Shown one piece after another: positions 2,627-18,974 of a DNA stretch of 20,933 nucleotides. The stretch is taken from sequence record NC_006556.1; one strand, written 5' to 3'. The notes below the pieces were generated by a model that worked only from the letters and a program-made list of their open reading frames with translations, did no database searches and had not been told where the DNA came from. The translations under genes were made by a program, and so were the position numbers. Within the stretch, counting starts at the first letter, position 1. Every line of letters starts with the position of its first letter.

Positions 2627-2684
2627 GAAGAAAAAGGAGGAGAAAAAAGAGGAAGTTGTCAAGGGGGCGATAGGGGTCTTTTAG
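2619..2684 (+). CDS. Possible 21-aa micro-protein MPKKKKEEKKEEVVKGAIGVF
   Basis: ATG overlaps the end of the upstream gene and follows GAGGT (SD-like, 2612-2616). It could instead be just the complement of the minus-strand gene's terminator. Confidence 0.3.
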   Translation: MPKKKKEEKKEEVVKGAIGVF

Positions 2685-3631
2685 TGGGCGGCTAAGAGGA
2701 TAAGTAGGGCAACGCTCAGCGGTAGTCCCACGAAATAGTAGAGTTTTTTGTTCAGTAGGGTGAATTTTGCGATTACGGCGTAGATATTTAGCGGGTGTGG
2801 GTACATCAACGCGGCGGCTGGCATCATATACAGCATTACCGCGGGCACAGAGACTTGGTCGTGGACGGCTGAGGCAAACATGGTGGCCATGGCTTCCACG
2901 TCTCCCGCCTCACNCCCAACGGNCATGGCGAATAGGGCGCGGATTATGAAGGCGGTAAGGAGGTCNGGGACAGAGGCCAAGAAGGTAGAGGTGATGCCTA
3001 GGGTTTGTTCCGCTAGGTGGATTTGATAGAGGGAGTCGGTTAGGAAGTAGGACGATATGGNCATGCTTATGGTGTTGAATAGCGTNGTGACTATGACGGA
3101 CTTAGGCGGAATCATGCCGGCCTCTGTCCTATATGTCAGNACGATTATAGTGGGCAACACCAAATAGCCTATCGCTATGTAGGCCCCAGCTATGAGGTGT
3201 AACGGCAACTGGAATCCCGCAGATATTAGATATGTCAGTAGGTTTACGCTTAGGGCCGCAACGGACCACAGTATTAGGTAGTGGACCCCCTTCCATATGT
3301 AGTCTGAGCCTATTATGTCTCTGCGCGTAAATGCCGTGACTATTATGCTGTCAACTATCGTAGAGGCTATGGTGTCTATCCAAGCGGCCAGAATATGTCC
3401 GTCCGCCATGAGCTTGATGGCCATTATGGCTTGGGGCAAAGCTATGAGCGCAGAGACCACGAGTACGTTGAACCAAATCGTGACGCGGTATAGGCTCAGA
3501 GTTATCTCTGTGGCGTAGGCCGTCGTGACCATTATGGCAATCCAAATCGCTATATTCAGATAGGGGTTGTTCACAAAGAACATGGCTATCGTGAGCCCCG
3601 CCACAACCGCGTTCAGTATTTTCAAGTCCAT
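2681..3631 (-). CDS. CaCA-superfamily (Na+/Ca2+ exchanger-like) multi-pass membrane protein with degenerate motifs
   Basis: About 10 hydrophobic segments and two alpha-repeats: ALIALPQ...DTIASTIVD and FLASVPD...ATMFASAVHD, matching GTSLPE...GNxxGSNxxN. Contains 6 ambiguous bases. Confidence 0.7.
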   Translation of the reverse strand: MDLKILNAVVAGLTIAMFFVNNPYLNIAIWIAIMVTTAYATEITLSLYRVTIWFNVLVVSALIALPQAIMAIKLMADGHILAAWIDTIASTIVDSIIVTAFTRRDIIGSDYIWKGVHYLILWSVAALSVNLLTYLISAGFQLPLHLIAGAYIAIGYLVLPTIIXLTYRTEAGMIPPKSVIVXTLFNTISMXISSYFLTDSLYQIHLAEQTLGITSTFLASVXDLLTAFIIRALFAMXVGXEAGDVEAMATMFASAVHDQVSVPAVMLYMMPAAALMYPHPLNIYAVIAKFTLLNKKLYYFVGLPLSVALLILLAAH

Positions 3632-4710: not shown

Positions 4711-5349
4711 ATGACGACCAGGCTGAAACTCTTNGATATGGTCCAGCGGAAGATATTCACGGCGAATCTCAACCCAGACAAAATCTGTGTCTCAAGCCAG
4801 ATATATGAGTGGTTGGGTTTGCCCAGCACTAAATGCGTACCGATAACGCCAACGACTCAAGCCGAAATAATGAGGGTTGCCGTCCCTATGGCGGACGGCC
4901 TTTACGCCATGGCGTATATAGTGCCGGACACAATAAGGTTGATACATAGCTATCTATTCACGTTCTCTTTCGCAGAGACGAAAGTGTTTGAGGTGTTGTA
5001 CGACGCTAGGCTGGGGGCTTATGGCGTCGTGATGCAGAATAAGTTCATGCCGCTAAGTAGTCTTGAGCCGTTTGTCTGCGATAACGTGGTGGGGCTCACT
5101 AGGCTGTGTTATATAATCGGTGATGTCGTGACTGTGAATGGCCACGCCAAGGTCGTAGGCTATACGACTCCCGAAATATACCGCATGTGGGTACGCGGCG
5201 TTGCTGAGCGGAATCTCAGCGATTCTGTGTTGACGATACCCTTGAGGGTTCACCGTGAGTTGGTCACCGAATATGAGACCATGTTAGCCAGTTGCGTGAA
5301 CAAATCACGGCGGTACATGCAGATACCGCGTCTTTGTTTGAGGGCATAG
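4711..5349 (+). CDS. Hypothetical protein (212 aa)
   Basis: Long ORF in the operon with no recognisable motif; weak AbrB-like VLTIPLRVHREL near the C-terminus. Confidence 0.75.
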   Translation: MTTRLKLXDMVQRKIFTANLNPDKICVSSQIYEWLGLPSTKCVPITPTTQAEIMRVAVPMADGLYAMAYIVPDTIRLIHSYLFTFSFAETKVFEVLYDARLGAYGVVMQNKFMPLSSLEPFVCDNVVGLTRLCYIIGDVVTVNGHAKVVGYTTPEIYRMWVRGVAERNLSDSVLTIPLRVHRELVTEYETMLASCVNKSRRYMQIPRLCLRA

Positions 5350-6364: not shown

Positions 6365-7222
6365 ATGGACTTGAGGACTATATACACGGCGTCTGTATTG
6401 GCCGCGGCTATAGTTACGGCTTTGGTCGGTTTCGTCGTGACTGAGAGTTTGTTGGCCCCCATATTGATATTCCTGACGGTGTTGGCGATATTTGACTACT
6501 GGGGCTATGAGGCCGCCAAGGTGGTGGCGCCCATGACTATGTTCCTATACACTCTGGCGTTCTTTGGCGCGCTATCGGGCGTCCAGCTTATCATAATAGC
6601 CGCGGTCATAATAAGCGCCTTGGCGCTTAAAGAAAAGCCGAAATTGGCCGGTCCTTGGCACGCCACTCTGGCGTATCCCCTCAGATTGGCCGCGTTGGCC
6701 CCCCTAGTGTTGTTGTTGGGGCCCCTCTATTTGATATACGACGCGGTTAGGCGTGGCGGGATAATATATAAGGCCGCGGCCGTGTTGGGGGCAATCGGCA
6801 TGGGCCTATTCATGTTTGGGAGGCCCTTAAGCCTATGGGTAGACCCCCATGTGATGTCATTTGGCTGGCTGGCCCAGATTCTCCCCCCAGAGGCCAATCC
6901 GATATACTGGGTAGGCGCGATTGGGTGGGAGGAATTGATATCTAGGGCGATTGGCCCTCTGGGAAACGCGTGGTGGGCCATAATGCACCTCCCCTCTAGG
7001 CTGGCCGCATTACCCGTATTGCCGGCTATAGGTATTGTCCTATTGATAAATATAGGCGGGCGTTGGCTGTGGGAGACCTATAAGGAGGGCGGCCTAATAG
7101 GGTCAATTATAGGCCATGCCGTATACAACGCCATGGTGTCGGCTTTCGCTTTGGGGATACAGTGGTGGCCTACGCTAATAATAATATCTATAATACTATA
7201 TGCCACTTTCAGAAAACCATAA
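6365..7222 (+). CDS. CPBP-family (Abi / type II CAAX) intramembrane glutamic protease
   Basis: Multi-pass protein with E189-E190-x3-R194, W204-x3-H208 and H251-x3-N255 (YKEGGLIGSIIGHAVYN). Confidence 0.85.
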   Translation: MDLRTIYTASVLAAAIVTALVGFVVTESLLAPILIFLTVLAIFDYWGYEAAKVVAPMTMFLYTLAFFGALSGVQLIIIAAVIISALALKEKPKLAGPWHATLAYPLRLAALAPLVLLLGPLYLIYDAVRRGGIIYKAAAVLGAIGMGLFMFGRPLSLWVDPHVMSFGWLAQILPPEANPIYWVGAIGWEELISRAIGPLGNAWWAIMHLPSRLAALPVLPAIGIVLLINIGGRWLWETYKEGGLIGSIIGHAVYNAMVSAFALGIQWWPTLIIISIILYATFRKP

Positions 7223-7729: not shown

Positions 7730-8116
7730 ATGAGGTGGTTATTGATTTTGGCGTTGGCGGCGGTATTGCTGGCGGTGTGGGCATATAACGTGTCCCACCC
7801 GCCACAGCCGAAAGTAGTGGTCGTAGGCCCAAGCACCAATACGGCCACACAGACGTCCCCCCCTCAACAACAACAACCGCAGTCCCAGCCGGTTATGGCG
7901 TGTCAAGGCACGCTAATCCAGTCGGGCCCCATTAGGGCGTGTAACGTGGTGTCGTATTACGGCAACATGATTGTACTACAATCGCCGGGCTGGATAACCG
8001 GCCAATTCGCCATTTCGGCCATATCTGGCCAGTGTGTGTTCAAGACGGTTGACGGCGTGCTTAGTATAGCTGGGGCTGGGTGTCAGGTTACAATTTTATA
8101 TAACGGGACTAGTTAG
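7730..8116 (+). CDS. Membrane-anchored protein with a P/Q/T-rich linker and a four-Cys beta domain
   Basis: Signal-anchor; VVVVGPSTNTAT resembles PVIVGPGTTTT of the 5710 gene; promoter TTATATATCCG at 7701-7711. Confidence 0.75.
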   Translation: MRWLLILALAAVLLAVWAYNVSHPPQPKVVVVGPSTNTATQTSPPQQQQPQSQPVMACQGTLIQSGPIRACNVVSYYGNMIVLQSPGWITGQFAISAISGQCVFKTVDGVLSIAGAGCQVTILYNGTS

Positions 8117-8358
8117 TGAATATGGTCTGGGAACTAATGAAGGGGTCCAGTAAGCCGACATATTGCGTAATTACGCCCTCCCCTACTGGGGATTTCAACG
8201 TGGCATGCGGCGACCAAATTAAGGCTAATGAATTGCTGAATATGGATAAGGCGTGTCTAGTGGAAATCCACCCAGACGGGCGTACTTTTGTTCAGTGTGA
8301 TAAAGGTCCGGCTGTATTATCGCGTATTGTGGACCTATCCAAATGGCTGAAGCGCTAA
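8116..8358 (+). CDS. Small protein with an internal 30-aa Cys-hairpin repeat
   Basis: TAGTG coupling; C-x5-P-x-G-x3-V-x-C occurs twice (residues 17-31 and 47-61). Confidence 0.7.
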   Translation: MNMVWELMKGSSKPTYCVITPSPTGDFNVACGDQIKANELLNMDKACLVEIHPDGRTFVQCDKGPAVLSRIVDLSKWLKR

Positions 8359-8825
8359 AGAAGTTACTCATAATTTTTTACCTAATAATCTTGGGTTTTT
8401 CTTGGTTACAACTACCTTGGTTTTTCGGCATTACGTCCGTTGGGGGTTTGGTGTTGACCCCCTCAAGCTATCCCTATATCCCTCCCCTTTCGCTAATCGT
8501 GACCGTCCCCACGAATACATGTGAGGGGTGGTCTGTCTATTTTGTCAACGGTACGTGGCTGGGCCTCTTTGAGATACATGTACCGGTAGTCCACTATTTC
8601 AGCGGGAGATATGAGATATTCAACATGAGGGCCTCTTTTGGTTCCAGCGTCCTAGACAATATAAAGCACTATATAGAGGCGTTGATATGGCCGGAAATGG
8701 CGGCTGTCCCGTATAACCACTCATGCGCGGCTAGGGTCATTTTCATTATACCCAGTCCTATAGTGTTAATCTCCTTTGCGGCGTTGGGTTACCACATATA
8801 CTACCGCTTTAGGCGCGTTTGGTAA
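8343..8825 (+). CDS. Divergent S26 signal peptidase (SipW/Sec11 type, Ser-His dyad)
   Basis: N-terminal TM; VLTPSSYP~VxSGSMxP (S41); PLSLIV~GDLIV; EGWSVYF~xGDIIVF; PVVHY~PIVHR (H84); AARVIFIIP~IGKVxxxIP; C-terminal TM. The GDN box is missing. Confidence 0.55.
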   Translation: MAEALKKLLIIFYLIILGFSWLQLPWFFGITSVGGLVLTPSSYPYIPPLSLIVTVPTNTCEGWSVYFVNGTWLGLFEIHVPVVHYFSGRYEIFNMRASFGSSVLDNIKHYIEALIWPEMAAVPYNHSCAARVIFIIPSPIVLISFAALGYHIYYRFRRVW

Positions 8826-8827
8826 CC

Positions 8828-8868
8828 TTTATATACGTGTGATATCTGACGTATATGGTGGTGATAAC
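8828..8868 (+). promoter_or_regulatory. Promoter with GTGATATC box
   Basis: TTTATATA at 8828-8835, GTGATATC at 8839-8846, GTGATAAC at 8861-8868; same layout as 18628-18646. Confidence 0.6.
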
Positions 8869-9631
8869 TAGGGGGTCGGCGAGTTACGTGAAAATAGGCC
8901 CCTACTTCATTAAGGTCTATGTGAAACGCGGGAAGCTGGATTCCCCATTACCGGTGGTGGGGATTTCTGGGTGTACGGAATATGGGTTCTACGCCACTAT
9001 AGACATGGACGGAAGGAGGCTGGCTAGGCGTTTTAGGCGCCATGAGCTTATCAACTACTACCGCATGTACGTGAGGGTCTCTGAGGAAGGTAAGGTTTGG
9101 ATTAATGAGCACGCCATAATCGGGCCGTTTAAAACAAAAAGCCAGGCGGTAAAGATAATGCGGGAGGCGAAAGACGACCCCAAACACCTTAGGACGTTTG
9201 TCCACTACGGCTGTCCTCATGCCGTGATACGGCTCACGCGTTTACCTAATGAGGTAGATATCATTAGGATAATAAATACAGAACTCCCTATGGGTAGGTT
9301 TATTGCGAAATACTTAAATATACAGCCGTTCAATATCCTCATGGCGGAACAATTTAGGCCCATGTATCCGGGCGTTCAGGTGGGTAGTTATCCCGATACA
9401 GTTCAAGGCTCACCTGCGGCTGAGAGGGCTGAGGAAGTCTATAAGGTGAAATACGCGGTTGGCATATGCCAAGCCCTCAAGGAGTACGACCCCCAGGCCT
9501 TCCAGGAGTACTTTGGCGGGGACATGCAGAAGTGTGTTAGGGCGGCCGGTTCCTTTGCCGACCTTAACTTTGACACGTGGAAGATTAAGTGGGGTAGGAA
9601 CCTAGGCGCCCAGATATCGGCTTTCGCATAA
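8855..9631 (+). CDS. Soluble 258-aa protein with a basic N-half; candidate nucleocapsid or structural protein
   Basis: Own promoter and terminator; RRLARRFRRH patch; heads the block of putative virion genes. The structural role is inference only. Confidence 0.6.
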   Translation: MVVITRGSASYVKIGPYFIKVYVKRGKLDSPLPVVGISGCTEYGFYATIDMDGRRLARRFRRHELINYYRMYVRVSEEGKVWINEHAIIGPFKTKSQAVKIMREAKDDPKHLRTFVHYGCPHAVIRLTRLPNEVDIIRIINTELPMGRFIAKYLNIQPFNILMAEQFRPMYPGVQVGSYPDTVQGSPAAERAEEVYKVKYAVGICQALKEYDPQAFQEYFGGDMQKCVRAAGSFADLNFDTWKIKWGRNLGAQISAFA

Positions 9632-10457: not shown

Positions 10458-11183
10458 ATGATAATACCGTTTAGCCTAGGGGCGTTGGCCGGATTGTTGA
10501 TAATAGCGTTCTTTGCCAGGCGCCAAATCATATTCGCCTTGGTGGCAATATTTATATCGGGCGCTTTGGCTGGGGTTGCCGGCTCAATCTACTATTCGTT
10601 TATGGCTATGTATTTGGCGGCGTTGACTATATACATTATCGTCCAAGAGGAAGGCCGTATTGTTGAGCGGGCGTTGGCGTTGTATCTAGGCACTTTGGCC
10701 ATTTGGCTGTCGGATAATAGCGCGGCGGCCTCAGCACTATCCCTAATAGCGTATCAATTAGTGATGCCGCTATTCCAGGCCATAAACAACGTCTTTGTCC
10801 AGGCGGGCATAGCGTTCTCTGGCCTACTGGCTTGGTCTATAGTGGCTAGGCGGATTATGACTGTGGCTGAGGAATTTCCGCTAATAGGGGCCGGCTATGT
10901 GTATCTGGCTTATTCCATATTGGCGCCTATGGTCATGACGTTGCCCGACTATCTGAAACTGGCCTTGGGGCTGGCCCTAATTGGGCCGTTCAGCCAAGCC
11001 GTCAAGGGTGACCTAGAGGCGCTTGAGGAAATAGCGCCCTTCCTCTGGCTATTGCCGATACCGATAGATACGGTCAAGGTGATAGGCGCGGCTGTGGCCA
11101 TAATAGAGTTGGCGCTAGGCGTGCTGTCCAAGAAGCGGCTATTGGCGTCCGCCATGTGGGCTGAGGCGATATTGCTGGCATGA
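10458..11183 (+). CDS. Multi-pass membrane protein (241 aa)
   Basis: Ala/Leu/Ile-rich hydrophobic segments throughout; ATGA overlap with the next gene. Confidence 0.8.
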   Translation: MIIPFSLGALAGLLIIAFFARRQIIFALVAIFISGALAGVAGSIYYSFMAMYLAALTIYIIVQEEGRIVERALALYLGTLAIWLSDNSAAASALSLIAYQLVMPLFQAINNVFVQAGIAFSGLLAWSIVARRIMTVAEEFPLIGAGYVYLAYSILAPMVMTLPDYLKLALGLALIGPFSQAVKGDLEALEEIAPFLWLLPIPIDTVKVIGAAVAIIELALGVLSKKRLLASAMWAEAILLA

Positions 11184-12052
11184 GCTATATACCGGACTTA
11201 TCGCGTTTTGGCGTCCTAGGCATATTGGCGCTTTTTGTTCCGTCATTTGTATACGGCGCTATGACTATGTACCTAGGCGTGGCTAACGGCTGGCTATTCC
11301 TAATCCAGTTGCTGGCCCTAATCGCGATTATTGCCCACTACAAAAATTTCAGTGAGGCCGTACTATTCGCCTTGGGGGCGGCTTTCGGCGGCTTGACCAC
11401 CCAATTTATAGGCATAAAGTGGCTAGTNGTAGACGCCCTATCGCCGGCACTATACGTTCTACTGTCTATGGTCAACACTATAGAAAAGGCGTTTTACTTG
11501 GGTATCGCCTTGGGCATGGTGGGCTTTCTACTGGCCCCCATAGTCTTTATCGTGACGACATTAGTATCGCTGGCCGCCATGCTTATACTAAGGCTCAGCG
11601 GCCTACTTTATGAGGCCGTGAATCTAGTGGTCCACGGCCTTAGGCATGTCCCAGAGGGGTATAGGGCGTTGTTGGCCCCTTGGATAGGGTCCGTCATGAT
11701 TGCCCTACCGATAGCTGTGTTGGGCGGCATGTTCCTTTCGGCGTTGGCTTTAGTTGTTGGGGCGGTAGTTGGGGGCGCTTTGGTGGGCATGTTGGGCACG
11801 GCCTCTGAGGTGTCTGCGTTGGCCGGATTCATAATACCGACGTTGCTGACAAGACCCCAAACCAAGACAATCGCAGAGGTGTTGATGGACATGGGCGCCC
11901 TATTCTTGGGGGTGATGTTGGTGGGCTATGGGGTAGTCCAGGTGTTGTGGACGGCGGGATATGCGGCCATATCTACACGCCACGCCAGTAGGGGGTTCTA
12001 CCTTATCGGACTTTCTGCAATAACTGCGGTGTTGATAGGTGCCGCTCACTAA
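11180..12052 (+). CDS. Multi-pass membrane protein (290 aa)
   Basis: About 9 hydrophobic Gly/Ala/Leu-rich segments. Confidence 0.8.
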   Translation: MSYIPDLSRFGVLGILALFVPSFVYGAMTMYLGVANGWLFLIQLLALIAIIAHYKNFSEAVLFALGAAFGGLTTQFIGIKWLXVDALSPALYVLLSMVNTIEKAFYLGIALGMVGFLLAPIVFIVTTLVSLAAMLILRLSGLLYEAVNLVVHGLRHVPEGYRALLAPWIGSVMIALPIAVLGGMFLSALALVVGAVVGGALVGMLGTASEVSALAGFIIPTLLTRPQTKTIAEVLMDMGALFLGVMLVGYGVVQVLWTAGYAAISTRHASRGFYLIGLSAITAVLIGAAH

Positions 12053-12823: not shown

Positions 12824-13351
12824 ATGGCTAGATATCCGGTACCTATGGTTCTGGCGGCCGCGATAGTCATAGGTGTAGTGTACGTAGTGGTCAACGCCAA
12901 CATCACTACGCCTTCCGTTTCGCCTTTCCTAAAGCAATATAACACAACTGCGGTTGGCGGCACTTTTAAGGGCGTGGTCTACGCCAACACTACGGGCAAA
13001 ATCTACTACGGCATGTTGCCCATTTATGGGGTCGTATACAGCACAACTACTACCGCGCTCAACTACACCATGGGCGGGAAGACTTTCACGGTTTGTTACG
13101 CTAACGGCTATGCCACGCCTTTGGTCAACATGACTGCCGGCACATGCACCAGTACGGTGGCCCTCTTGGCCGGCATGAAGGTTGTGAATGGGACGGTTAC
13201 CCTAATGCTCAACAACGGCACCACTATAGCTGTGCCTCTCAACTACATAGCCAACGGGCCGGTGGACATAGCCGTTGGCCAGTACGACACTACCGGCCAA
13301 AAGGCGTACGTAATTTACATGCCCTCTGGCGGGTCCGTCGTAGTTAAATAA
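12824..13351 (+). CDS. Exported beta-rich glycoprotein, RxPIPL-signal family
   Basis: MARYPVPMVLAAAIVIG|VVYVVV; 7 sequons; two Cys pairs; TATA at 12793-12804. Confidence 0.8.
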   Translation: MARYPVPMVLAAAIVIGVVYVVVNANITTPSVSPFLKQYNTTAVGGTFKGVVYANTTGKIYYGMLPIYGVVYSTTTTALNYTMGGKTFTVCYANGYATPLVNMTAGTCTSTVALLAGMKVVNGTVTLMLNNGTTIAVPLNYIANGPVDIAVGQYDTTGQKAYVIYMPSGGSVVVK

Positions 13352-13373: not shown

Positions 13374-14186
13374 ATGGAGTGGAAGAGATTTCCGATTCCG
13401 CTAATTCTGGCGGCTGTATTAGTAGGCGCAGTGTTGATAATAATCACGATAAACGTGACCGTACCCAAGGCGTTCTATGCCTCAAGCGGCAACGCCACGA
13501 TAACCCTATATGCTGGGTCGCCCTATATGTACTACGACACTTGGCCGGGCACGGTAACCGTGAATGTCGTAAGCGGTACGGCGGCATTTACTACTACTAT
13601 ATACTACGGCATTATGTTGCCGTCGTACAACGCCTATACGCCACTCATAGCTATCCTAACAAATGCGCCTAAGGCGTTCTACACGACCTCTACGTGGTCT
13701 ATATCCACGCCAGTGGGTTCCCGCGCCATAAAGTTGTGGCTTGAGCAGGATTCGAGTGGCGGGTGGTGGTTGGTCGTGGAAGACACAAACCAAGCGGTTT
13801 ATCCCGTGTGTGCCGTGTATAAAATGAACATGACCTCACTGTCCTTAAGCGGTGCCACGTATTATTTGTTCTACCCAATACCCACTACCGCCACGTCCAC
13901 TACCGCGCCAATTCCGTCAGAATGTGGCGGTGACTACACTTTGGTCCAATCGTGGAGTTTCAGCGGTGGAAATATAGTGGGTACAAACGTCTATAGCGGG
14001 ACCACCCGTGTGGCCAGTAGGGGTCTGACCGCAACTACTGCGTCTTCTGTATCCTACACGACCCAATATCTACAATATCCGGGCATAAATAGGACGGACC
14101 TCACTGTGTTTTACATAGAAACGGGATATGCCGTGGCGTTCAATCAGGTTAACAACCCAATTACCGTCACGATAACCCACAGCTAA
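13374..14186 (+). CDS. Exported beta-rich glycoprotein, RxPIPL-signal family
   Basis: MEWKRFPIPLILAAVLVGA|VLIIITINV; T/Y/S-rich; ends in a beta strand. Confidence 0.8.
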   Translation: MEWKRFPIPLILAAVLVGAVLIIITINVTVPKAFYASSGNATITLYAGSPYMYYDTWPGTVTVNVVSGTAAFTTTIYYGIMLPSYNAYTPLIAILTNAPKAFYTTSTWSISTPVGSRAIKLWLEQDSSGGWWLVVEDTNQAVYPVCAVYKMNMTSLSLSGATYYLFYPIPTTATSTTAPIPSECGGDYTLVQSWSFSGGNIVGTNVYSGTTRVASRGLTATTASSVSYTTQYLQYPGINRTDLTVFYIETGYAVAFNQVNNPITVTITHS

Positions 14187-14235: not shown

Positions 14236-14538
14236 ATGAACACCAAACCCAAACTCGTGGAAAAAGAATTCGCAATAATCTACGACGGTAAGTACCTAAT
14301 ATTCGCGGGAATCAAGCCGGAACTTGGGATAAACATGTTGGCCCTATTCGGGCCGGACACTAGGTGTGATATCTGTGGGAGGAAGATAGGGTACGGCCCC
14401 TATATGGTCGTGGCTGAGAAATACGGCGAAAAAGGCCATGTGGTTTGTGGGAAGTGCATGAACTCTCCCGACTTTAAGCCGGTAGTGGAAAAAATGAGAC
14501 GTAGGGCTTTAGGTAGTCGGCGTCAAAACAATATTTGA
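14236..14538 (+). CDS. Zinc-finger protein (CxxC...CxxC)
   Basis: CDIC and CGKC with a basic C-terminal helix; 30-nt convergent overlap with the next gene. Confidence 0.75.
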   Translation: MNTKPKLVEKEFAIIYDGKYLIFAGIKPELGINMLALFGPDTRCDICGRKIGYGPYMVVAEKYGEKGHVVCGKCMNSPDFKPVVEKMRRRALGSRRQNNI

Positions 14539-15261
14539 GGCGGCGTTTGTCATAAAGAAATAGCCCATTATTATTTTGAAACTACCGAAATCGTAGAGGT
14601 TGTATCCACCTATCGTGGACCCAGGCGATATGCTGAGAGTGCCGGTGTAGATACGGGTGGGCCAGCCGGTTGACCAACTTCCAAGTGAGCATGAATACCA
14701 ATTGCCCACGACTACAATCCAGTTTGCTGAGCCGATTAGGCTATTTTCTATACTGCATATCGTAGACTCTTTGCCGCTCACGTCACTCTGTGAGGCCAGC
14801 GTGAATAGGTACTCACTTCCCGCAGTGGCGGCAACCTTCCACACAAACGCGGCTGAGTAGGCTGAGCCGGTGGCTGAGTTGTAGACTTGGAATACCGTGA
14901 GCACTAGGCCGCTATTGTTGTAGACGTAGAACTTGGCCGTGCCAAGCTGATATCCCGTCCCGCTAGGTATCTGGCCTATAGAGGCCGCCAGGGCGTGATA
15001 TTTTGTATAGCCGGAATATGAGGAACTATCGCCTATGTGGTCTATATAGGTTATACTGGTGACGTTGGCGCTCACTACTGTCAACTTCCCGCCTATGACG
15101 AAATCGGTAGTTACCGCGGGCGCAACTACCGTATAGGTGGTTCCGTTAAATGTGACGTATTTGGGGTTGTACGAATATACATATTTGATACTGACCACGA
15201 TAACTATCGTAACTGCGGCTGTGAATACGGCGGCCAGTATTAGGGGGATTGGAATCCGCAT
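14509..15261 (-). CDS. Exported beta-rich protein, RxPIPL-signal family (reverse orientation)
   Basis: MRIPIPLILAAVFTAA|VTIVIVVS; minus-strand stop followed by CCCT...TTTTTT. Confidence 0.8.
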   Translation of the reverse strand: MRIPIPLILAAVFTAAVTIVIVVSIKYVYSYNPKYVTFNGTTYTVVAPAVTTDFVIGGKLTVVSANVTSITYIDHIGDSSSYSGYTKYHALAASIGQIPSGTGYQLGTAKFYVYNNSGLVLTVFQVYNSATGSAYSAAFVWKVAATAGSEYLFTLASQSDVSGKESTICSIENSLIGSANWIVVVGNWYSCSLGSWSTGWPTRIYTGTLSISPGSTIGGYNLYDFGSFKIIMGYFFMTNAASNIVLTPTT

Positions 15262-15290: not shown

Positions 15291-16010
15291 ATGACTCCTA
15301 GAAATAAACGGTTGTTGGCCGCGGCGTTGGCCATAATAGCGATACTGGCCATAGCGGCCTTTCTACTAATGGGCGCCTCAAAGGGCGGTGGGATACCCAC
15401 ACAGCAACCCACCACCACTACTACCTCTCCTCCCCCAGCATATACCGACGTGTATCCTACCGTGTCCCCCCCTAATAGTGTGAGCGGTATCTATATTGAT
15501 AGTGGGAGGTTTACGTGTGATGGCACTACATGTACTCTGACCGTTTCGGGCTATGGGACCTTTGTATCAATCGTGGCCTATAGCGCTAGGCCTCTGTCTT
15601 CCGCTAACGCCACGGTTGGTCCGGCCTACATAACCGTTGGGAACTACCGCATATGGCTATTCGGCTATATAGCCACCTCTCTGGCCAACTATTCGGATAC
15701 GGCGTTTAGCGTGTACGTCTTTCCGGCTTTGAAATGCGGCTATATCTACTACCCCAAAGTGGGCGCCAGCATAGCGTTGGCCGTATTTAATGACACCAAC
15801 TACTGGGTCGTAGTCCCCACGAATAGTCCCGGCACATGCGCCCTTCCGGGCCACATAATAACCGTTGACAATACAAACGCGGTGGCGTTTGTAGACGGGA
15901 CCTCTACTACGATATCGATAGGCACGCTTCCCAAATCGGTCAGCGGCGTGGCCTATGCCTATATGGTGTCTATATCGCAAAGCGGGAGGTACGCGATTCA
16001 GTTCTCATAA
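15291..16010 (+). CDS. Membrane-anchored beta-rich glycoprotein, paralog of the 5710 and 16363 genes
   Basis: Signal-anchor, PTQQPTTTTTSPPP linker, CDGTTCTLTVSG motif, C-terminal GRYAIQFS. Confidence 0.8.
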   Translation: MTPRNKRLLAAALAIIAILAIAAFLLMGASKGGGIPTQQPTTTTTSPPPAYTDVYPTVSPPNSVSGIYIDSGRFTCDGTTCTLTVSGYGTFVSIVAYSARPLSSANATVGPAYITVGNYRIWLFGYIATSLANYSDTAFSVYVFPALKCGYIYYPKVGASIALAVFNDTNYWVVVPTNSPGTCALPGHIITVDNTNAVAFVDGTSTTISIGTLPKSVSGVAYAYMVSISQSGRYAIQFS

Positions 16011-16362: not shown

Positions 16363-17073
16363 ATGTTTAGGTGGTTCCCGGCGTTAATACTGGCTTTTGT
16401 ATTCACCGTAGGCATCACGATAATCATAGTGGCCAATTTGACGGCCACAACTGGCGCGGCCCCCTCAACGCCAACTGGGATTTCGGTGTACCCAACGTCC
16501 AGCGTCACGAATCCCGCCAGCGCGGTCTGGATAACCGATAAGGCGTCGTGTAGTGGGACTACGTGTACCCTATCGATATCCGGCCCAACGGGCGGGGTCA
16601 TGACGATAGTCTACGACACGACCAAACCGACCACCAACGCAACCCTATCTGCGGCATGTGTGCCCGTGCCGGGACTCAACACCACTATATACCTATTCGG
16701 AATCGCGTCTACGGGCCTATACAACCAAACCCTCACGGCCTCAAGCGGAAGCATAACCGTGGAACTACACAGCACCTACGGCTATCTTTACTACAACGTA
16801 AGCAACACCATAGTTGGCGTGCCTCTATCGGTGACTTTGGCCTCTACGACATATGTGGCGGTCCCAACCGCCCCAGCGTCTTTGCCTAGTGGAAGCGCCA
16901 AGTACTGGGTCTTGGTGAATAATGACAACGGCATGTACTACATATATTCGGGCGGGATTTTGGCGGCCTACGGCTATGTGGCCAATTGTACTATACCCAC
17001 AATACCCAGCGGCGTCATGATGGGCTTCCGCGTATACATGCCGGGAGTAGGCACATATACCCTATCTGGATAA
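16363..17073 (+). CDS. Exported beta-rich glycoprotein: RxPIPL-type signal fused to the GTTCTL domain
   Basis: MFRWFPALILAFVFTVG|ITIIIV; CSGTTCTLSISG; C-terminal GTYTLSG. Confidence 0.8.
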   Translation: MFRWFPALILAFVFTVGITIIIVANLTATTGAAPSTPTGISVYPTSSVTNPASAVWITDKASCSGTTCTLSISGPTGGVMTIVYDTTKPTTNATLSAACVPVPGLNTTIYLFGIASTGLYNQTLTASSGSITVELHSTYGYLYYNVSNTIVGVPLSVTLASTTYVAVPTAPASLPSGSAKYWVLVNNDNGMYYIYSGGILAAYGYVANCTIPTIPSGVMMGFRVYMPGVGTYTLSG

Positions 17074-17074
17074 T

Positions 17075-17893
17075 ATGGCCATGAGGTGGCCAATCCCGCT
17101 TATAGTGGCCTTGGCTTTGGTGTCAGCTGTGACGTTGACTATAACCTACACCTATCAATTCTACGCGCCAGATATCGTGGGAAGCGCGGTTCCCTATACG
17201 GCCTCTGGCGCGTCTAACGGCTATTTGGCTGGGGGCATGGGATACATATTCATATATGTCAACGGGACGTATCCCAATCCGTACCTCATGACGTGGAATC
17301 CCGGCCCCAATCCGGCCATATCTACGTCGGGCCCCAGCTATCCATTTCCGGCCGTGATATACATGCCGAATCCGGTCAACGCCACAATCCAAGTCCCCAA
17401 CTCTAGGTGTTCTTCCGGTTACGACTACATATTGACCTACTACTATCCGGCTTACGGCATAGTCGTAGTGAAATACGCGCTATGTGGCCAATTCGATTAC
17501 GCGTTTGTCGGCTATCCTATCCAAGGCCACCCGGGTTACTACACCACTCTGACCGGCGTTGATCCATGTAACCAAGCGTGGTCGTATATTGTTGCCGCGC
17601 CAGACCCATTTGGGTACTATCCGGACGTATTACACAGCTATAGCGTGTCGTCTTCCGGCATAACGTTCACTTTCGATTTGGTTCAGCAACTCACTACCGG
17701 CGTCCAGTGTTATAGGGGCGATAAGACCCTCACGTATTCGTTCAGCGCGCCCAGCATATACGGCCTAAAGACTTGGCCGTTTGTATACAGCTATGGCGGG
17801 ATTCAATTCGCCCTATATCAACCCATATGGTTCTACGTGGGCGCAACGGGGTCCTATTCGGTTAATGCCACCTATATACCCTCTTGGTCCTAA
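17075..17893 (+). CDS. Exported beta-rich Tyr/Pro-rich protein, RxPIPL-signal family
   Basis: MAMRWPIPLIVALALVSA|VTLTITYTYQFY; four Cys. Confidence 0.8.
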   Translation: MAMRWPIPLIVALALVSAVTLTITYTYQFYAPDIVGSAVPYTASGASNGYLAGGMGYIFIYVNGTYPNPYLMTWNPGPNPAISTSGPSYPFPAVIYMPNPVNATIQVPNSRCSSGYDYILTYYYPAYGIVVVKYALCGQFDYAFVGYPIQGHPGYYTTLTGVDPCNQAWSYIVAAPDPFGYYPDVLHSYSVSSSGITFTFDLVQQLTTGVQCYRGDKTLTYSFSAPSIYGLKTWPFVYSYGGIQFALYQPIWFYVGATGSYSVNATYIPSWS

Positions 17894-18602: not shown

Positions 18603-18627
18603 CCTTGGCTAATGTCAACCGGTATCA

Positions 18628-18646
18628 TTTATATATCCGTGATATC
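18628..18646 (+). promoter_or_regulatory. Promoter with GTGATATC box
   Basis: TTTATATA-TCC-GTGATATC, with ATG 18657 29 nt after the TATA start. Confidence 0.6.
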
Positions 18647-18656
18647 ATGGGTATAC

Positions 18657-18974
18657 ATGGTGGTGGTCGGGTCCCCAATCAAAATAAACCAACTCCCGGC
18701 GGAAAAAGTACGTGAGCTAGTCAGAAAGGCGATATGTACGGCCATGCGAAACACCAAATCGCGCTTCATAACGTTCACCTANAACGCCATAGAAAAGGAA
18801 CTACNAAAAATGGGGTTCACCTCTGGGACGGGCGTAGTGAGGTCAATACTGACCGGCCTAATGGCTGAATTCGGCTTTACCCTAGTGGAAAAACATAAGC
18901 GGAACTACGGCTATGTGTATCGCTGGGGCGTGACGAAAGAAAGGCTGGAAGAATTGTGTAGAGACATATGGTGA
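18657..18974 (+). CDS. Putative winged-helix DNA-binding protein
   Basis: Helix, strand FITFT, NAIEKEL..GF, VVRSIL..LM helix, then a wing (FTLVEK..YVYRW). Codon TAN at 18780-18782 is ambiguous (Tyr or stop). Confidence 0.6.
   Translation: MVVVGSPIKINQLPAEKVRELVRKAICTAMRNTKSRFITFTXNAIEKELXKMGFTSGTGVVRSILTGLMAEFGFTLVEKHKRNYGYVYRWGVTKERLEELCRDIW

What the first reader, a model, noticed from the sequence alone, without database searches (positions are those of the whole stretch)
8343..8825. Probable virus-encoded SipW/Sec11-type signal peptidase
Seen: size, two-TM topology and the order of boxes match ER-type S26 peptidases, with candidate Ser41 and His84, but SM has become SS, HR has become HY and the GDN box is lost. 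Established: Bacillus SipW is a dedicated peptidase for TasA/TapA fibres. Inference: a specialised peptidase for the five RxPIPL-signal proteins, whose signals differ from ordinary host Sec signals. It could also be catalytically dead.
Basis: partly seen in the sequence, partly recalled or inferred. Interest (0 to 1): 0.7.

Follow-up and report, generated by a model that had tools for sequence, protein, structure and literature searches.

The report
Possible signal-peptidase-like protein in archaeal virus
A small two-helix membrane protein, conserved in every known relative of this hot-spring archaeal virus, looks like a stripped-down signal peptidase with an unchanging serine and histidine where the enzyme's active residues sit, but the resemblance is too weak to prove and its targets are unknown.

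Summary
The window is the complete genome of Thermoproteus tenax spherical virus 1 (TTSV1, Globuloviridae). The finding is gp15 (8343-8825, 160 aa), annotated "hypothetical".

There are two hydrophobic helices around a domain of about 100 residues that faces outward. Ser41 and His84 are present and unchanged in all 18 relatives that cover those positions.

- No S24/S26 sequence model matches any of the 16 relatives scanned, while true Sec11/SipW controls score 1e-31.
- Profile-profile probabilities stay below 3%.
- A confident AlphaFold model (pLDDT 92) puts LexA, CI repressors, SipA and a viral signal peptidase I at the top of two structure libraries. These all share the LexA/signal-peptidase fold. 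None of the hits is significant (E 0.04-2, TM below 0.5).
- Every alignment that reaches His84 puts Ser41 and His84 on the catalytic Ser56 and His96 of human SEC11A; two shorter ones reach only Ser41.
- There is no conserved acidic residue.

My best reading, at confidence 0.45, is a minimal Ser/His peptidase that acts on the outer face of the membrane.

The proposed link to the RxPIPL proteins is untested. That motif lies on the cytoplasmic side, away from the putative active site. A second core gene, gp11, carries protease-like motifs and competes for that role.

The parts
8343..8825 (+). gp15 CDS (160 aa). A core globulovirus membrane protein with two helices and a candidate minimal LexA/signal-peptidase-like domain.
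   Evidence: ORF. Annotated CDS. Homologs. AlphaFold model with pLDDT 92.3 and pTM 0.80. Foldseek top hits from clan SF.
8364..8432 (+). First transmembrane helix (residues ~8-30), preceded by Lys6 and Lys7. It holds conserved polar residues Ser20 and Gln23.
   Evidence: Hydropathy and charge counts. Model helices 2-22 and 24-28. S20 and Q23 at least 90% conserved.
8454..8492 (+). Box-B-like and box-C-like motif L38-T-P-S41-x-x-P44-x-x-P-P-L-S50. Ser41 (8463-8465) is the candidate nucleophile.
   Evidence: Invariance. hhalign places S41 on SEC11A Ser56 and P44 on Pro59. In the model, S41 lies in a short helical turn (40-42) just after the first strand.
8583..8600 (+). Box-D-like motif P81-V-V-H84-Y85-F. 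His84 (8592-8594) is the candidate general base.
   Evidence: P81, H84 and Y85 invariant in 16 sequences. A further relative, L176, has H-R here. H84 aligned on SEC11A His96.
8622..8624 (+). Invariant Asn94 at the end of the fifth strand. It may be the remnant of the box-E Asn; this is inference only.
   Evidence: Invariant. Strand 90-94. Its alignment to the GDNN box is low-confidence.
8733..8822 (+). Second transmembrane helix (residues ~131-152), preceded by conserved Pro137 and followed by a basic C-terminal tail that ends in the conserved motif [RK]-[RKV]-[VI]-[WFL].
   Evidence: P137 falls on the conserved Pro of S26B (SEC11A Pro147).
8116..8358 (+). gp14, a small four-cysteine protein with no hydrophobic segment. 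Its stop overlaps the gp15 start by 16 nt. It is a conserved gene partner of gp15 and its function is unknown.
   Evidence: Sequence. Adjacent to a gp15 relative in PSV, PSV2, TSPV1, L087, L089, L090, L092, L175 and L176.
12824..13351 (+). gp23, N-terminus MARYPVPMVLAAA. Candidate substrate (inferred only).
13374..14186 (+). gp24, N-terminus MEWKRFPIPLILAAV. Candidate substrate (inferred only).
14509..15261 (-). gp26, N-terminus MRIPIPLILAAV. Candidate substrate (inferred only).
17075..17893 (+). gp31, N-terminus MAMRWPIPLIVALA. Candidate substrate (inferred only).
16363..17073 (+). Long form of gp30, N-terminus MFRWFPALILAF. This is a degenerate version of the motif. The annotated start is 16600.

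Best explanation
gp15 is a very divergent, minimal relative of the LexA/signal-peptidase fold (MEROPS clan SF), built like an archaeal/ER-type (S26B) signal peptidase.

Proposed anatomy: an N-in membrane anchor, an extracytoplasmic beta-domain of about 100 residues, and a second helix that returns a basic tail to the cytoplasm.

Proposed mechanism: Ser41 sits about a dozen residues beyond the first helix, at the outer membrane surface. It would act as nucleophile, with His84 on a neighbouring strand as general base. This would be a Ser/His dyad without the usual Asp, perhaps helped by invariant Asn94 or Tyr85.

Proposed target: viral membrane-inserted precursors, cut at the outer end of their hydrophobic N-terminal segment. 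The most likely substrates are the envelope proteins that share the R-x-P-[IV]-P-[LM] N-terminal signal, which include virion protein VP3 of PSV and PSV2.

Shown: the gene is a conserved core gene; the topology; the invariance of Ser41, Pro44, Ser50, Gly62, Pro81, His84 and Asn94; a confident model whose nearest structures all belong to clan SF.

Inferred: homology to S26, catalytic activity, and the identity of the substrates.
For: 1. Fold. Two AlphaFold models (pLDDT 77 and 92.3) each rank LexA C-terminal domains from three species at the top of the PDB search, with S. pyogenes SipA lower in the list (prob up to 0.77). No other fold recurs.

2. Register. hhalign against SEC11A (sequence checked as 100% identical to 7p2p_A) and against the 120-sequence S26B profile places S41 on Ser56, P44 on Pro59 and H84 on His96. 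With the 60-sequence profile, the default alignment reaches only box B and the extended alignment adds His84.

3. Shuffle controls. With the membrane helix kept and the SEC11A domain shuffled, 0 of 150 shuffles reach the real score. Six invariant-on-invariant identities (L38, S41, P44, G62, H84, P137) compare with a column-shuffle mean of 1.3 and maximum of 5; 0 of 200 shuffles reach six.

4. Architecture. N-in/C-in topology, a 39-45-residue Ser-to-His spacing against 37-40 in S26B, and the Ser about 12 residues past the first helix.

5. Conservation. In a family that is only 28-55% identical, the invariant residues include Ser, His and Asn, residue types that often sit in catalytic sites, clustered in the box-B and box-D positions. 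One relative has H-R as in S26B.

6. Context. Viral proteins with an R-x-P-x-P-[LMIV] N-terminus but no detectable similarity beyond residue 35 accompany gp15 relatives in four isolates and in contigs L087, L092, L175 and L176.
Against: - No S24/S26 model in Pfam or NCBIfam matches any of the 16 relatives scanned at E <= 10. Controls hit TIGR02228 at 1e-31.
- A HMMER profile search of PDB sequences finds nothing.
- hhalign probabilities are 0.2-2.4%, with P of 0.019-0.35.
- The soluble domain alone is not above its shuffles (19 of 150). The raw profile score is not above column shuffles (140 of 200).
- hhalign against E. coli LexA finds nothing.
- Foldseek E-values are all >= 0.04 and TM-scores are below 0.5. 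SEC11A (7p2p) itself is not among the 50 hits listed.
- There is no invariant Asp or Glu.
- I had no model coordinates, so I could not check whether Ser41 and His84 are close in space.
- The candidate substrates have a 22-26-residue hydrophobic span, which is anchor-like, with no conserved small-x-small site after it.
- HHpred work on PSV2 by others annotated four proteins and noted a fifth as a DUF1286-family member; the gp15 ortholog ORF19 was not among them (bioRxiv 10.1101/2020.01.16.907410).
Confidence: 0.45

Rival explanations
1. gp15 has the LexA/signal-peptidase fold but does not cut anything. It would act as a membrane-anchored chaperone or docking factor for assembly of envelope proteins, protrusions or filaments, as the inactive signal-peptidase homolog SipA does for pilus polymerisation in Streptococcus pyogenes. 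Alternatively it could simply be a structural envelope protein.
For: - SipA (4n31) and a phage 'SipA' are among the Foldseek hits.
- The Asp that mutagenesis of S26B enzymes found essential (my knowledge) is missing.
- The conserved cytoplasmic tail (YY.FRRVW) and the tightly coupled cytoplasmic partner gp14 suggest protein-protein contacts rather than catalysis.
- TSPV1 carries surface filaments (PMC10970483).
Against: - By my knowledge of the SipA structure paper, SipA-type proteins have lost the catalytic residues. This family keeps Ser41 and His84 without exception across 28-55% identity.
- One relative even has the canonical H-R.
- Globuloviruses encode no recognisable sortase-like partner. 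Pfam scans of 10 TTSV1 proteins found no significant match.
Confidence: 0.2
2. The resemblance to signal peptidases is coincidental. gp15 would then be a globulovirus-specific envelope or assembly protein with a fold of its own. The invariant Ser, His, Asn and Pro residues would be there for structure or binding. Its basic C-terminal tail, together with gp14, would link the envelope to the nucleoprotein core during non-lytic release.
For: - Every statistical test of similarity is non-significant or mixed.
- TM-scores are 0.3-0.49.
- In the four isolates the gene sits directly upstream of the VP1 homolog (upstream of ORF 8855-9631, which contains it, in TTSV1), and it is translationally coupled to gp14.
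- The very C-terminus is strongly conserved, which is not a feature of S26B enzymes.
Against: - It would be an unlikely coincidence for the only recurrent fold in two libraries to be the one predicted beforehand from motifs.
- It would also be a coincidence for six invariant residues to fall collinearly on S26B invariant residues (0 of 200 shuffles).
- VP1 adjacency is not kept in the divergent lineage: in L087 the VP1 homolog lies 4.6 kb away.
Confidence: 0.3
3. The RxPIPL N-terminal signals are recognised or cut by something other than gp15. Candidates are the polytopic core protein gp11 (6365-7222), which carries CPBP/CAAX-protease-like motifs, or a host enzyme. gp15, if active, would then have other targets.
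For: - The RxPIPL motif sits at the cytoplasmic end of the hydrophobic span, out of reach of an outward-facing active site.
- In gp11 and five relatives (TSPV1 GP7, PSV gp21, PSV2 ORF15, L087, L092), E189-E190-x-x-x-R194, H208 and H251-x-x-x-N255 are invariant. These match the EExxxR / FxxxH / HxxxN signature of CPBP intramembrane proteases.
Against: - No Pfam or PDB sequence match for gp11 or its relatives at E <= 10.
- All 33 database relatives lack any Pfam domain.
- There is no evidence that the RxPIPL N-termini are cut at all.
Confidence: 0.3

Closest known systems
ER/archaeal-type signal peptidase I, MEROPS S26B (eukaryotic Sec11/SEC11A, archaeal SPase I, Bacillus SipW)
   Same: - Similar size (160 aa against about 180).
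- An N-in anchor plus a C-terminal helix, as in SipW and archaeal enzymes.
- An outward-facing beta-domain.
- Ser in an S-x-x-P context about 12 residues after the first helix.
- His 39-45 residues later in a [IV]-P-[IV]-[IVM]-H motif.
- A conserved Gly between them and a conserved Pro before the last helix, all collinear.
- SipW is dedicated to fibre proteins TasA and TapA (my knowledge), which parallels a virus-dedicated enzyme.
   Different: - No match to TIGR02228, PF00717 or PF10502 at E <= 10.
- 'SGSM' is replaced by 'T-[PAS]-S-x'.
- 'HR' is replaced by 'HY' in all but one relative.
- There is no GDNN box and no conserved Asp.
- The His-to-Asn spacing is shorter (10-19 residues, against 15-22 to the Asp in S26B).
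- There is an extra helix at residues 103-115.
- The C-terminal tail is strongly conserved.
LexA / UmuD / phage CI C-terminal domain (MEROPS S24)
   Same: These are the best structural matches. The catalytic beta-domain is about the same minimal size. The Ser-to-base spacing is similar (37 in LexA, my knowledge). By my knowledge of these sequences, a conserved Asn follows the base-carrying hairpin (LexA '...LLPEN').
   Different: S24 proteins are soluble and self-cleaving, and they use Lys rather than His. There is no sequence signal at all (hhalign P 0.8). gp15 is membrane-anchored at both ends.
SipA/LepA-type inactive signal-peptidase homologs (S. pyogenes SipA, PDB 4N31)
   Same: A membrane-anchored minimal SPase-like domain that appears in the Foldseek lists. 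It is associated with assembly of surface filaments.
   Different: By my knowledge of the SipA structure paper, SipA lacks the catalytic Ser and Lys. gp15 keeps Ser and His invariant. SipA works with a sortase, and none is recognisable here.
Virus-encoded signal peptidase I of giant viruses (for example Pandoravirus, BFVD A0A2U7UFU6)
   Same: A virus-encoded member of the same fold. It is the third BFVD hit (second non-self; E 0.066).
   Different: Its UniProt name in BFVD is 'Signal peptidase I', so it is recognised as such; I did not examine its sequence. gp15 is not recognisable by sequence and comes from an archaeal virus.

Membership tests
Peptidase S26B (Sec11/SipW/archaeal signal peptidase I) | Significant match to the curated family models (NCBIfam TIGR02228 sigpep_I_arch, NF046067 SipW; Pfam S24/S26 models) | tested here: not met
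   No hit at E <= 10 for any of the 16 family members scanned. The controls SEC11A and a phage SipW-like protein hit TIGR02228 at 4.5e-31 and 3.4e-31.
Peptidase S26B (Sec11/SipW/archaeal signal peptidase I) | LexA/signal-peptidase beta-fold (clan SF) | tested here: inconclusive
   Foldseek top hits in PDB and BFVD are almost all clan SF. But E is 0.04-2, TM is 0.3-0.49, and SEC11A is not among the 50 hits listed.
Peptidase S26B (Sec11/SipW/archaeal signal peptidase I) | Nucleophile Ser in box B (SGSMxP) just outside the membrane anchor | tested here: inconclusive
   Invariant Ser41 in an S-x-x-P44 context aligns with Ser56 and Pro59 of SEC11A in every hhalign run. The Gly and Met of the box are absent, and the alignments are not significant.
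Peptidase S26B (Sec11/SipW/archaeal signal peptidase I) | General-base His in box D (H-R) | tested here: inconclusive
   Invariant His84 aligns with His96. The following Arg is Tyr in the 16 aligned sequences and Arg only in the further relative L176.
Peptidase S26B (Sec11/SipW/archaeal signal peptidase I) | Conserved Asp of box E (GDNN). It is essential in yeast Sec11, SipW and the M. voltae enzyme (my knowledge). | tested here: not met
   There is no invariant Asp or Glu anywhere in the 16-sequence alignment. Only Asn94 is invariant in that region.
Peptidase S26B (Sec11/SipW/archaeal signal peptidase I) | N-in membrane anchor with the catalytic domain outside (plus a C-terminal helix in SipW and archaeal forms) | tested here: met
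   Hydropathy and positive-inside charge counts across the family. Helices 2-28 and 138-149 in the model.
Peptidase S26B (Sec11/SipW/archaeal signal peptidase I) | Cleaves signal peptides after a small-x-small site | not testable with these tools
   This needs biochemistry. The candidate substrates show no conserved small-x-small site after their hydrophobic span.
Peptidase S24 (LexA/UmuD/CI) | Ser/Lys dyad in a soluble self-cleaving domain | tested here: not met
   The base position holds His, not Lys. The protein has two membrane helices. hhalign against E. coli LexA gives P 0.8.
SipA/LepA-type inactive SPase homologs | SPase-like fold that has lost the catalytic residues | tested here: not met
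   Ser41 and His84 are invariant in all 18 relatives that cover them.

The most novel reading that the evidence does not exclude
Globuloviruses carry their own minimal signal peptidase: a Ser/His dyad enzyme of about 160 residues, without the Asp, so diverged that no sequence method finds it. It matures a virus-specific class of envelope, protrusion or filament proteins, including virion protein VP3, that are marked by the R-x-P-I-P-L N-terminal signal. To my knowledge this would be the first processing enzyme assigned to this family. A full-text search of the held papers found none that links globuloviruses to signal peptidase.
Probability: 0.3. Interest if true: 0.7.

Novelty: new variant of a known kind. 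Interest (0 to 1): 0.55.

Why it matters
About 98% of globulovirus proteins have no annotation, and nothing is known about how these enveloped, non-lytic viruses of hyperthermophiles build their envelope (bioRxiv 10.1101/2020.01.16.907410; PMC12662056).

A testable enzymatic role for a core gene would give a first handle on virion maturation. So would the recognition that several unrelated viral surface proteins share one N-terminal signal.

If it is active, the protein would also mark a lower size limit for the signal-peptidase fold, and would show that fold working as a Ser/His dyad without the Asp, at about 90 degrees C.

If it is inactive, it would be an archaeal-virus parallel to SipA-type assembly factors.

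Tried and rejected
Searches that found no S24/S26 signal:
- Pfam, NCBIfam and PHROGs on gp15 and on the aligned relatives. The only hit was PHROG 36990, unknown function, which matches TTSV1 gp15 end to end (1-160 of 160).
- phmmer and hmmsearch against PDB sequences. These gave only weak thioredoxin and protease-inhibitor noise, which disappeared with the deeper alignment.
- An exhaustive HMMER profile search of 1.84 billion representatives. It found 13 real relatives, all small proteins from metagenome contigs, and no cellular bridge to S26. Three long repetitive proteins also matched; the one I inspected (P0020) was a junk repeat.

hhalign comparisons:
- Against LexA: nothing.
- Against a phage SipW-like protein: only box B, P 0.55.
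- Against 60-sequence and 120-sequence S26B profiles built from loci fetched here: P 0.35 and 0.2.

Attempts that failed for practical reasons:
- I tried to obtain a crenarchaeal host signal peptidase. The genome and metagenome scans returned only Clostridia SipW-like proteins and sequences 39-84% identical to human SEC11A.
- The IMG/VR scan found only TTSV1 itself.
- The TSPV1 paper with virion proteomics and two other papers were not held in the library.
- Model coordinates are not exposed, so the Ser41-His84 distance could not be measured.

Ideas considered and rejected:
- The RxPIPL motif as a class III (prepilin-like) signal. It lacks the [KR]-[GA] cleavage context, and Pfam matches nothing.
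- VP1 as a substrate. It has no signal sequence and should be cytoplasmic.
Full report
IDENTITY OF THE WINDOW AND THE GENE

The window is the complete 20,933-bp genome of Thermoproteus tenax spherical virus 1 (TTSV1; NC_006556 / AY722806; Globuloviridae), at 100% identity. This is an enveloped, non-lytic virus of a hyperthermophilic archaeon (PMC12662056).

The finding is the annotated CDS TTSV1_gp15 (8343-8825, +, 160 aa, 'hypothetical protein'). Its ATG overlaps the end of gp14 by 16 nt.

The protein has homologs in all four isolated globuloviruses, at 39-51% tblastn identity:
- PSV gp25
- PSV2 ORF19
- TSPV1 GP10

Two further searches added metagenomic relatives. One was a word-indexed search of 5.8 billion proteins. 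The other was an exhaustive HMMER profile search of 1.84 billion representatives. Together they added about a dozen small proteins from hot-spring-type contigs and nothing cellular. Three long repetitive proteins also matched; the one I inspected was a junk repeat. IMG/VR holds only TTSV1 itself. gp15 is therefore a core gene confined to globulovirus-like elements.

CHECK OF THE OBSERVATION

- Topology. Two hydrophobic helices (about residues 4-28 and 132-150) bracket a domain of about 100 residues. Lys/Arg are concentrated before the first helix and in the C-terminal tail (2-5 in 14 residues or fewer), while the domain is charge-balanced. The positive-inside rule therefore gives N-in/C-in with the domain outside.
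- Invariant residues. In a 16-sequence alignment at 28-55% identity to TTSV1, the invariant residues are P44, P48, S50, G62, P81, H84, Y85, N94 and P117. S41 is present in all 15 sequences that cover it. Two more divergent relatives (L175, L176) keep S41, H84 and N94. L176 reads I-P-I-M-H-R-F, which carries the canonical S26B 'HR'.
- Spacing. Ser-to-His is 39-45 residues, against 37-40 in 57 genuine S26B sequences.
- Missing box. There is no GDN box and no invariant acidic residue.

SEQUENCE-LEVEL TESTS OF THE S26 IDEA: NEGATIVE OR WEAK

Family models and sequence searches found nothing:
- Pfam and NCBIfam find nothing for any of the 16 members at E <= 10.
- The controls score 4.5e-31 and 3.4e-31 on TIGR02228. 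The controls were human SEC11A and a phage SipW-like ORF. My typed SEC11A sequence was confirmed as 100% identical to PDB 7p2p_A.
- HMMER against PDB sequences finds nothing.

Profile-profile comparison is not significant:

| Comparison | Result |
|---|---|
| SEC11A alone | probability 2.4%, P 0.019 |
| 60-sequence S26B profile | P 0.35 |
| 120-sequence profile (Sec11-like and SipW-like, Neff 5) | P 0.2 |
| Phage SipW-like protein | P 0.55 |
| E. coli LexA | P 0.8 |

The register is nevertheless always the same. 'V-L-T-P-S41-x-x-P44' falls on 'V-L-S-G-S56-M-E-P59', and '[IV]-P-V-V-H84' falls on 'I-P-I-V-H96'. In the extended alignment, G62 and P137 also fall on invariant Gly and Pro of S26B.

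The shuffle controls are mixed:
- With SEC11A's membrane helix kept and its soluble domain shuffled, 0 of 150 shuffles reach the real score.
- With the soluble domains alone, 19 of 150 shuffles do.
- With the gp15 columns shuffled, the raw score is unremarkable (140 of 200 reach it). The count of invariant-on-invariant identities is six, against a null mean of 1.3 and maximum of 5, with 0 of 200 reaching six.

I read this as a collinear set of motif matches that does not amount to demonstrable homology.

STRUCTURE-LEVEL TEST: CONSISTENT BUT NOT SIGNIFICANT

- Models. AlphaFold2 with six sequences gave pLDDT 77. With 16 sequences it gave pLDDT 92.3 and pTM 0.80, with the same secondary structure. 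The order of elements is helix 2-28, strand 34-36, a helical turn at 40-42 that holds Ser41, strands 51-56, 62-72, 76-87 (which holds His84) and 90-94 (which ends at Asn94), helix 103-115, strands 119-123 and 130-136, then the second membrane helix.
- PDB. With both models, Foldseek puts LexA C-terminal domains at the top. S. pyogenes SipA appears further down. E is 0.15-2, probability reaches 0.77, and target-normalised TM is 0.3-0.49.
- BFVD. After the self hit, the best matches are a CI repressor (E 0.042, prob 1.00), Pandoravirus signal peptidase I (E 0.066) and a phage 'SipA' (E 0.078). More CI and LexA proteins follow.
- Other folds. No other fold recurs; other hits have probabilities of 0.08 or less.
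- Limits. None of this passes a conventional threshold, and SEC11A itself is not among the 50 PDB hits listed.
- Why it still counts. The placement of Ser41 at the start of a short helix after the first strand, and of His84 inside a strand, matches where S24/S26 enzymes carry their nucleophile and base (my knowledge of those structures).
- What I could not do. Coordinates are not exposed, so I could not measure the Ser-His distance.

I put the probability that the domain has the clan SF fold at roughly 0.7-0.75.

SURROUNDINGS

- gp14 partner. gp14 is a protein of about 80 aa with four conserved cysteines and no hydrophobic segment. It abuts or overlaps the gp15 gene in every context examined: TTSV1, PSV, PSV2, TSPV1, L087, L089 (reversed order), L090, L092, L175 and L176. 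This suggests coupled expression and perhaps a complex with the conserved cytoplasmic tail (...YY.FRRVW).
- VP1 adjacency. In the four isolates the VP1 homolog follows gp15 (in TTSV1 as the end of ORF 8855-9631). In the divergent lineage it lies 4.6 kb away, so that adjacency is not essential.

CANDIDATE SUBSTRATES

- TTSV1 has four proteins that begin R-x-P-[IV]-P-[LM] followed by 22-26 hydrophobic residues (gp23, gp24, gp26, gp31), and one degenerate case, the long form of gp30.
- The same N-terminus occurs in three proteins in each of PSV, PSV2 and TSPV1, including virion protein VP3 of PSV and PSV2. It also occurs in contigs L092, L087, L175 and L176, which carry gp15 relatives.
- Beyond residue 35 most of these proteins show no detectable similarity to one another. 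The N-terminus therefore behaves as a shared signal module.

- The Arg-Pro-x-Pro element lies at the cytoplasmic end of the span, opposite the putative active site. It cannot itself be the cleavage site of an outward-facing enzyme.
- The span has the length of a membrane anchor, and no conserved small-x-small site follows it.
- Co-occurrence of two core gene sets proves little.

Conserved polar residues in gp15's first helix (S20, Q23) and a frequent Thr in the middle of the signals' hydrophobic span (my reading of the N-termini printed) could mediate recognition within the membrane. That is speculation.

A COMPETING PROTEASE CANDIDATE

The polytopic core protein gp11 (6365-7222) and five relatives share invariant E189-E190-x-x-x-R194, H208 and H251-x-x-x-N255. 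The relatives are TSPV1 GP7, PSV gp21, PSV2 ORF15, and one ORF each on L087 and L092. The motifs match the three signature motifs of CPBP/CAAX intramembrane proteases, in order. Pfam and PDB sequence searches do not confirm this, and all 33 database relatives lack a Pfam domain. It remains a motif-level lead. It is, however, a plausible alternative handler for a signal element at the inner membrane face.

COMPARISON WITH KNOWN FAMILIES

- gp15 works most like an S26B (Sec11/SipW/archaeal) signal peptidase in architecture, and it looks most like the minimal S24 domain in structure.
- It fails two membership criteria for S26B: no model match and no box-E Asp. It meets the topology criterion. The fold, Ser and His criteria are inconclusive.
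- It is not S24, because it has His rather than Lys and is membrane-anchored.
- It is not SipA-like in the sense of having lost its catalytic residues.
- I therefore do not file it as a Sec11/SipW member. I propose it as a possible far-diverged variant of the clan.

LITERATURE AND NOVELTY

- GenBank calls the protein hypothetical, UniProt/BFVD calls it 'Transmembrane protein', and its PHROG has unknown function.
- HHpred work on PSV2 annotated four proteins and noted a fifth as a DUF1286-family member; the gp15 ortholog was not among them.
- A full-text search found no paper that holds both 'globulovirus' and 'signal peptidase'.

VERDICT

| Question | Verdict or estimate |
|---|---|
| Observation | confirmed |
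| Active Ser/His peptidase of signal-peptidase type | about 0.45 |
| Same fold but non-catalytic | about 0.2 |
| Unrelated envelope or assembly protein | about 0.3 |
| Link to the RxPIPL proteins | reasonable but untested; the signal's position in the membrane complicates it |
| Interest | 0.55 |

Noticed in passing
window 6365-7222 (gp11); L004:6423-7280; L002:8919-9821; L003:13909-14859; L087:11457-12419; L092:4811-5665: A polytopic core membrane protein with invariant EExxxR, H and HxxxN motifs, in the order typical of CPBP/CAAX intramembrane proteases. Pfam and PDB sequence searches do not confirm it. All 33 metagenomic relatives lack any Pfam domain.
   Followed up: partly
window 8855-9340 (in frame with annotated gp16 at 9341-9631): The 486 bases between gp15 and the annotated VP1 homolog are unannotated. 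They form one 258-aa ORF with VP1. The N-terminal part has homologs in PSV2 (ORF26 region, E 2e-11) and in L092 just upstream of its VP1 homolog (E 1e-10). So there is either a missed gene or a fusion specific to TTSV1.
   Followed up: partly
window 12824, 13374, 14509(-), 17075 and 16363; L002:7133, 12756, 15479; L003:12365, 17717, 18554; L004:9151, 14277, 15060: The R-x-P-[IV]-P-[LM] N-terminus plus a long hydrophobic span is shared by proteins with no detectable similarity beyond residue 35, including virion protein VP3 of PSV and PSV2. It behaves as a portable viral signal or anchor module.
   Followed up: partly
window 8116-8358 (gp14) and its homologs next to every gp15 relative examined: A small protein with four conserved cysteines and no hydrophobic segment is always adjacent to gp15 or overlaps it (a 16-nt overlap in TTSV1). 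In L087, L090, L175 and L176 a gp18-like small membrane protein lies between the two genes.
   Followed up: partly
L087:3048-3587; L175:176-715; L177:1-9206: A divergent globulovirus-like lineage carries a phage-type integrase. One copy (L177) lies next to ordinary host genes, including a tRNA synthetase, a polyprenyl synthase and a permease. This suggests integrated proviruses, whereas the ICTV profile states that globuloviruses do not integrate.
   Followed up: no
window 16363-16599 and 15291-15314: The annotated starts of gp30 (16600) and gp27 (15315) cut off upstream in-frame ATGs. Those longer forms would give both proteins a hydrophobic signal-like N-terminus. The long forms of the two proteins are 31% identical to each other over 205 residues.
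   Followed up: no
window ORFs 2681-3631(-), 4711-5349, 11180-12052, 18612-18974: Ambiguous bases in the deposited sequence give X residues in several translations (gp4, gp8, gp21, gp34).
   Followed up: no
L176:776-1300: One divergent gp15 relative has H-R instead of H-Y after the conserved His. That is the dipeptide found in true Sec11/SipW box D.
   Followed up: no
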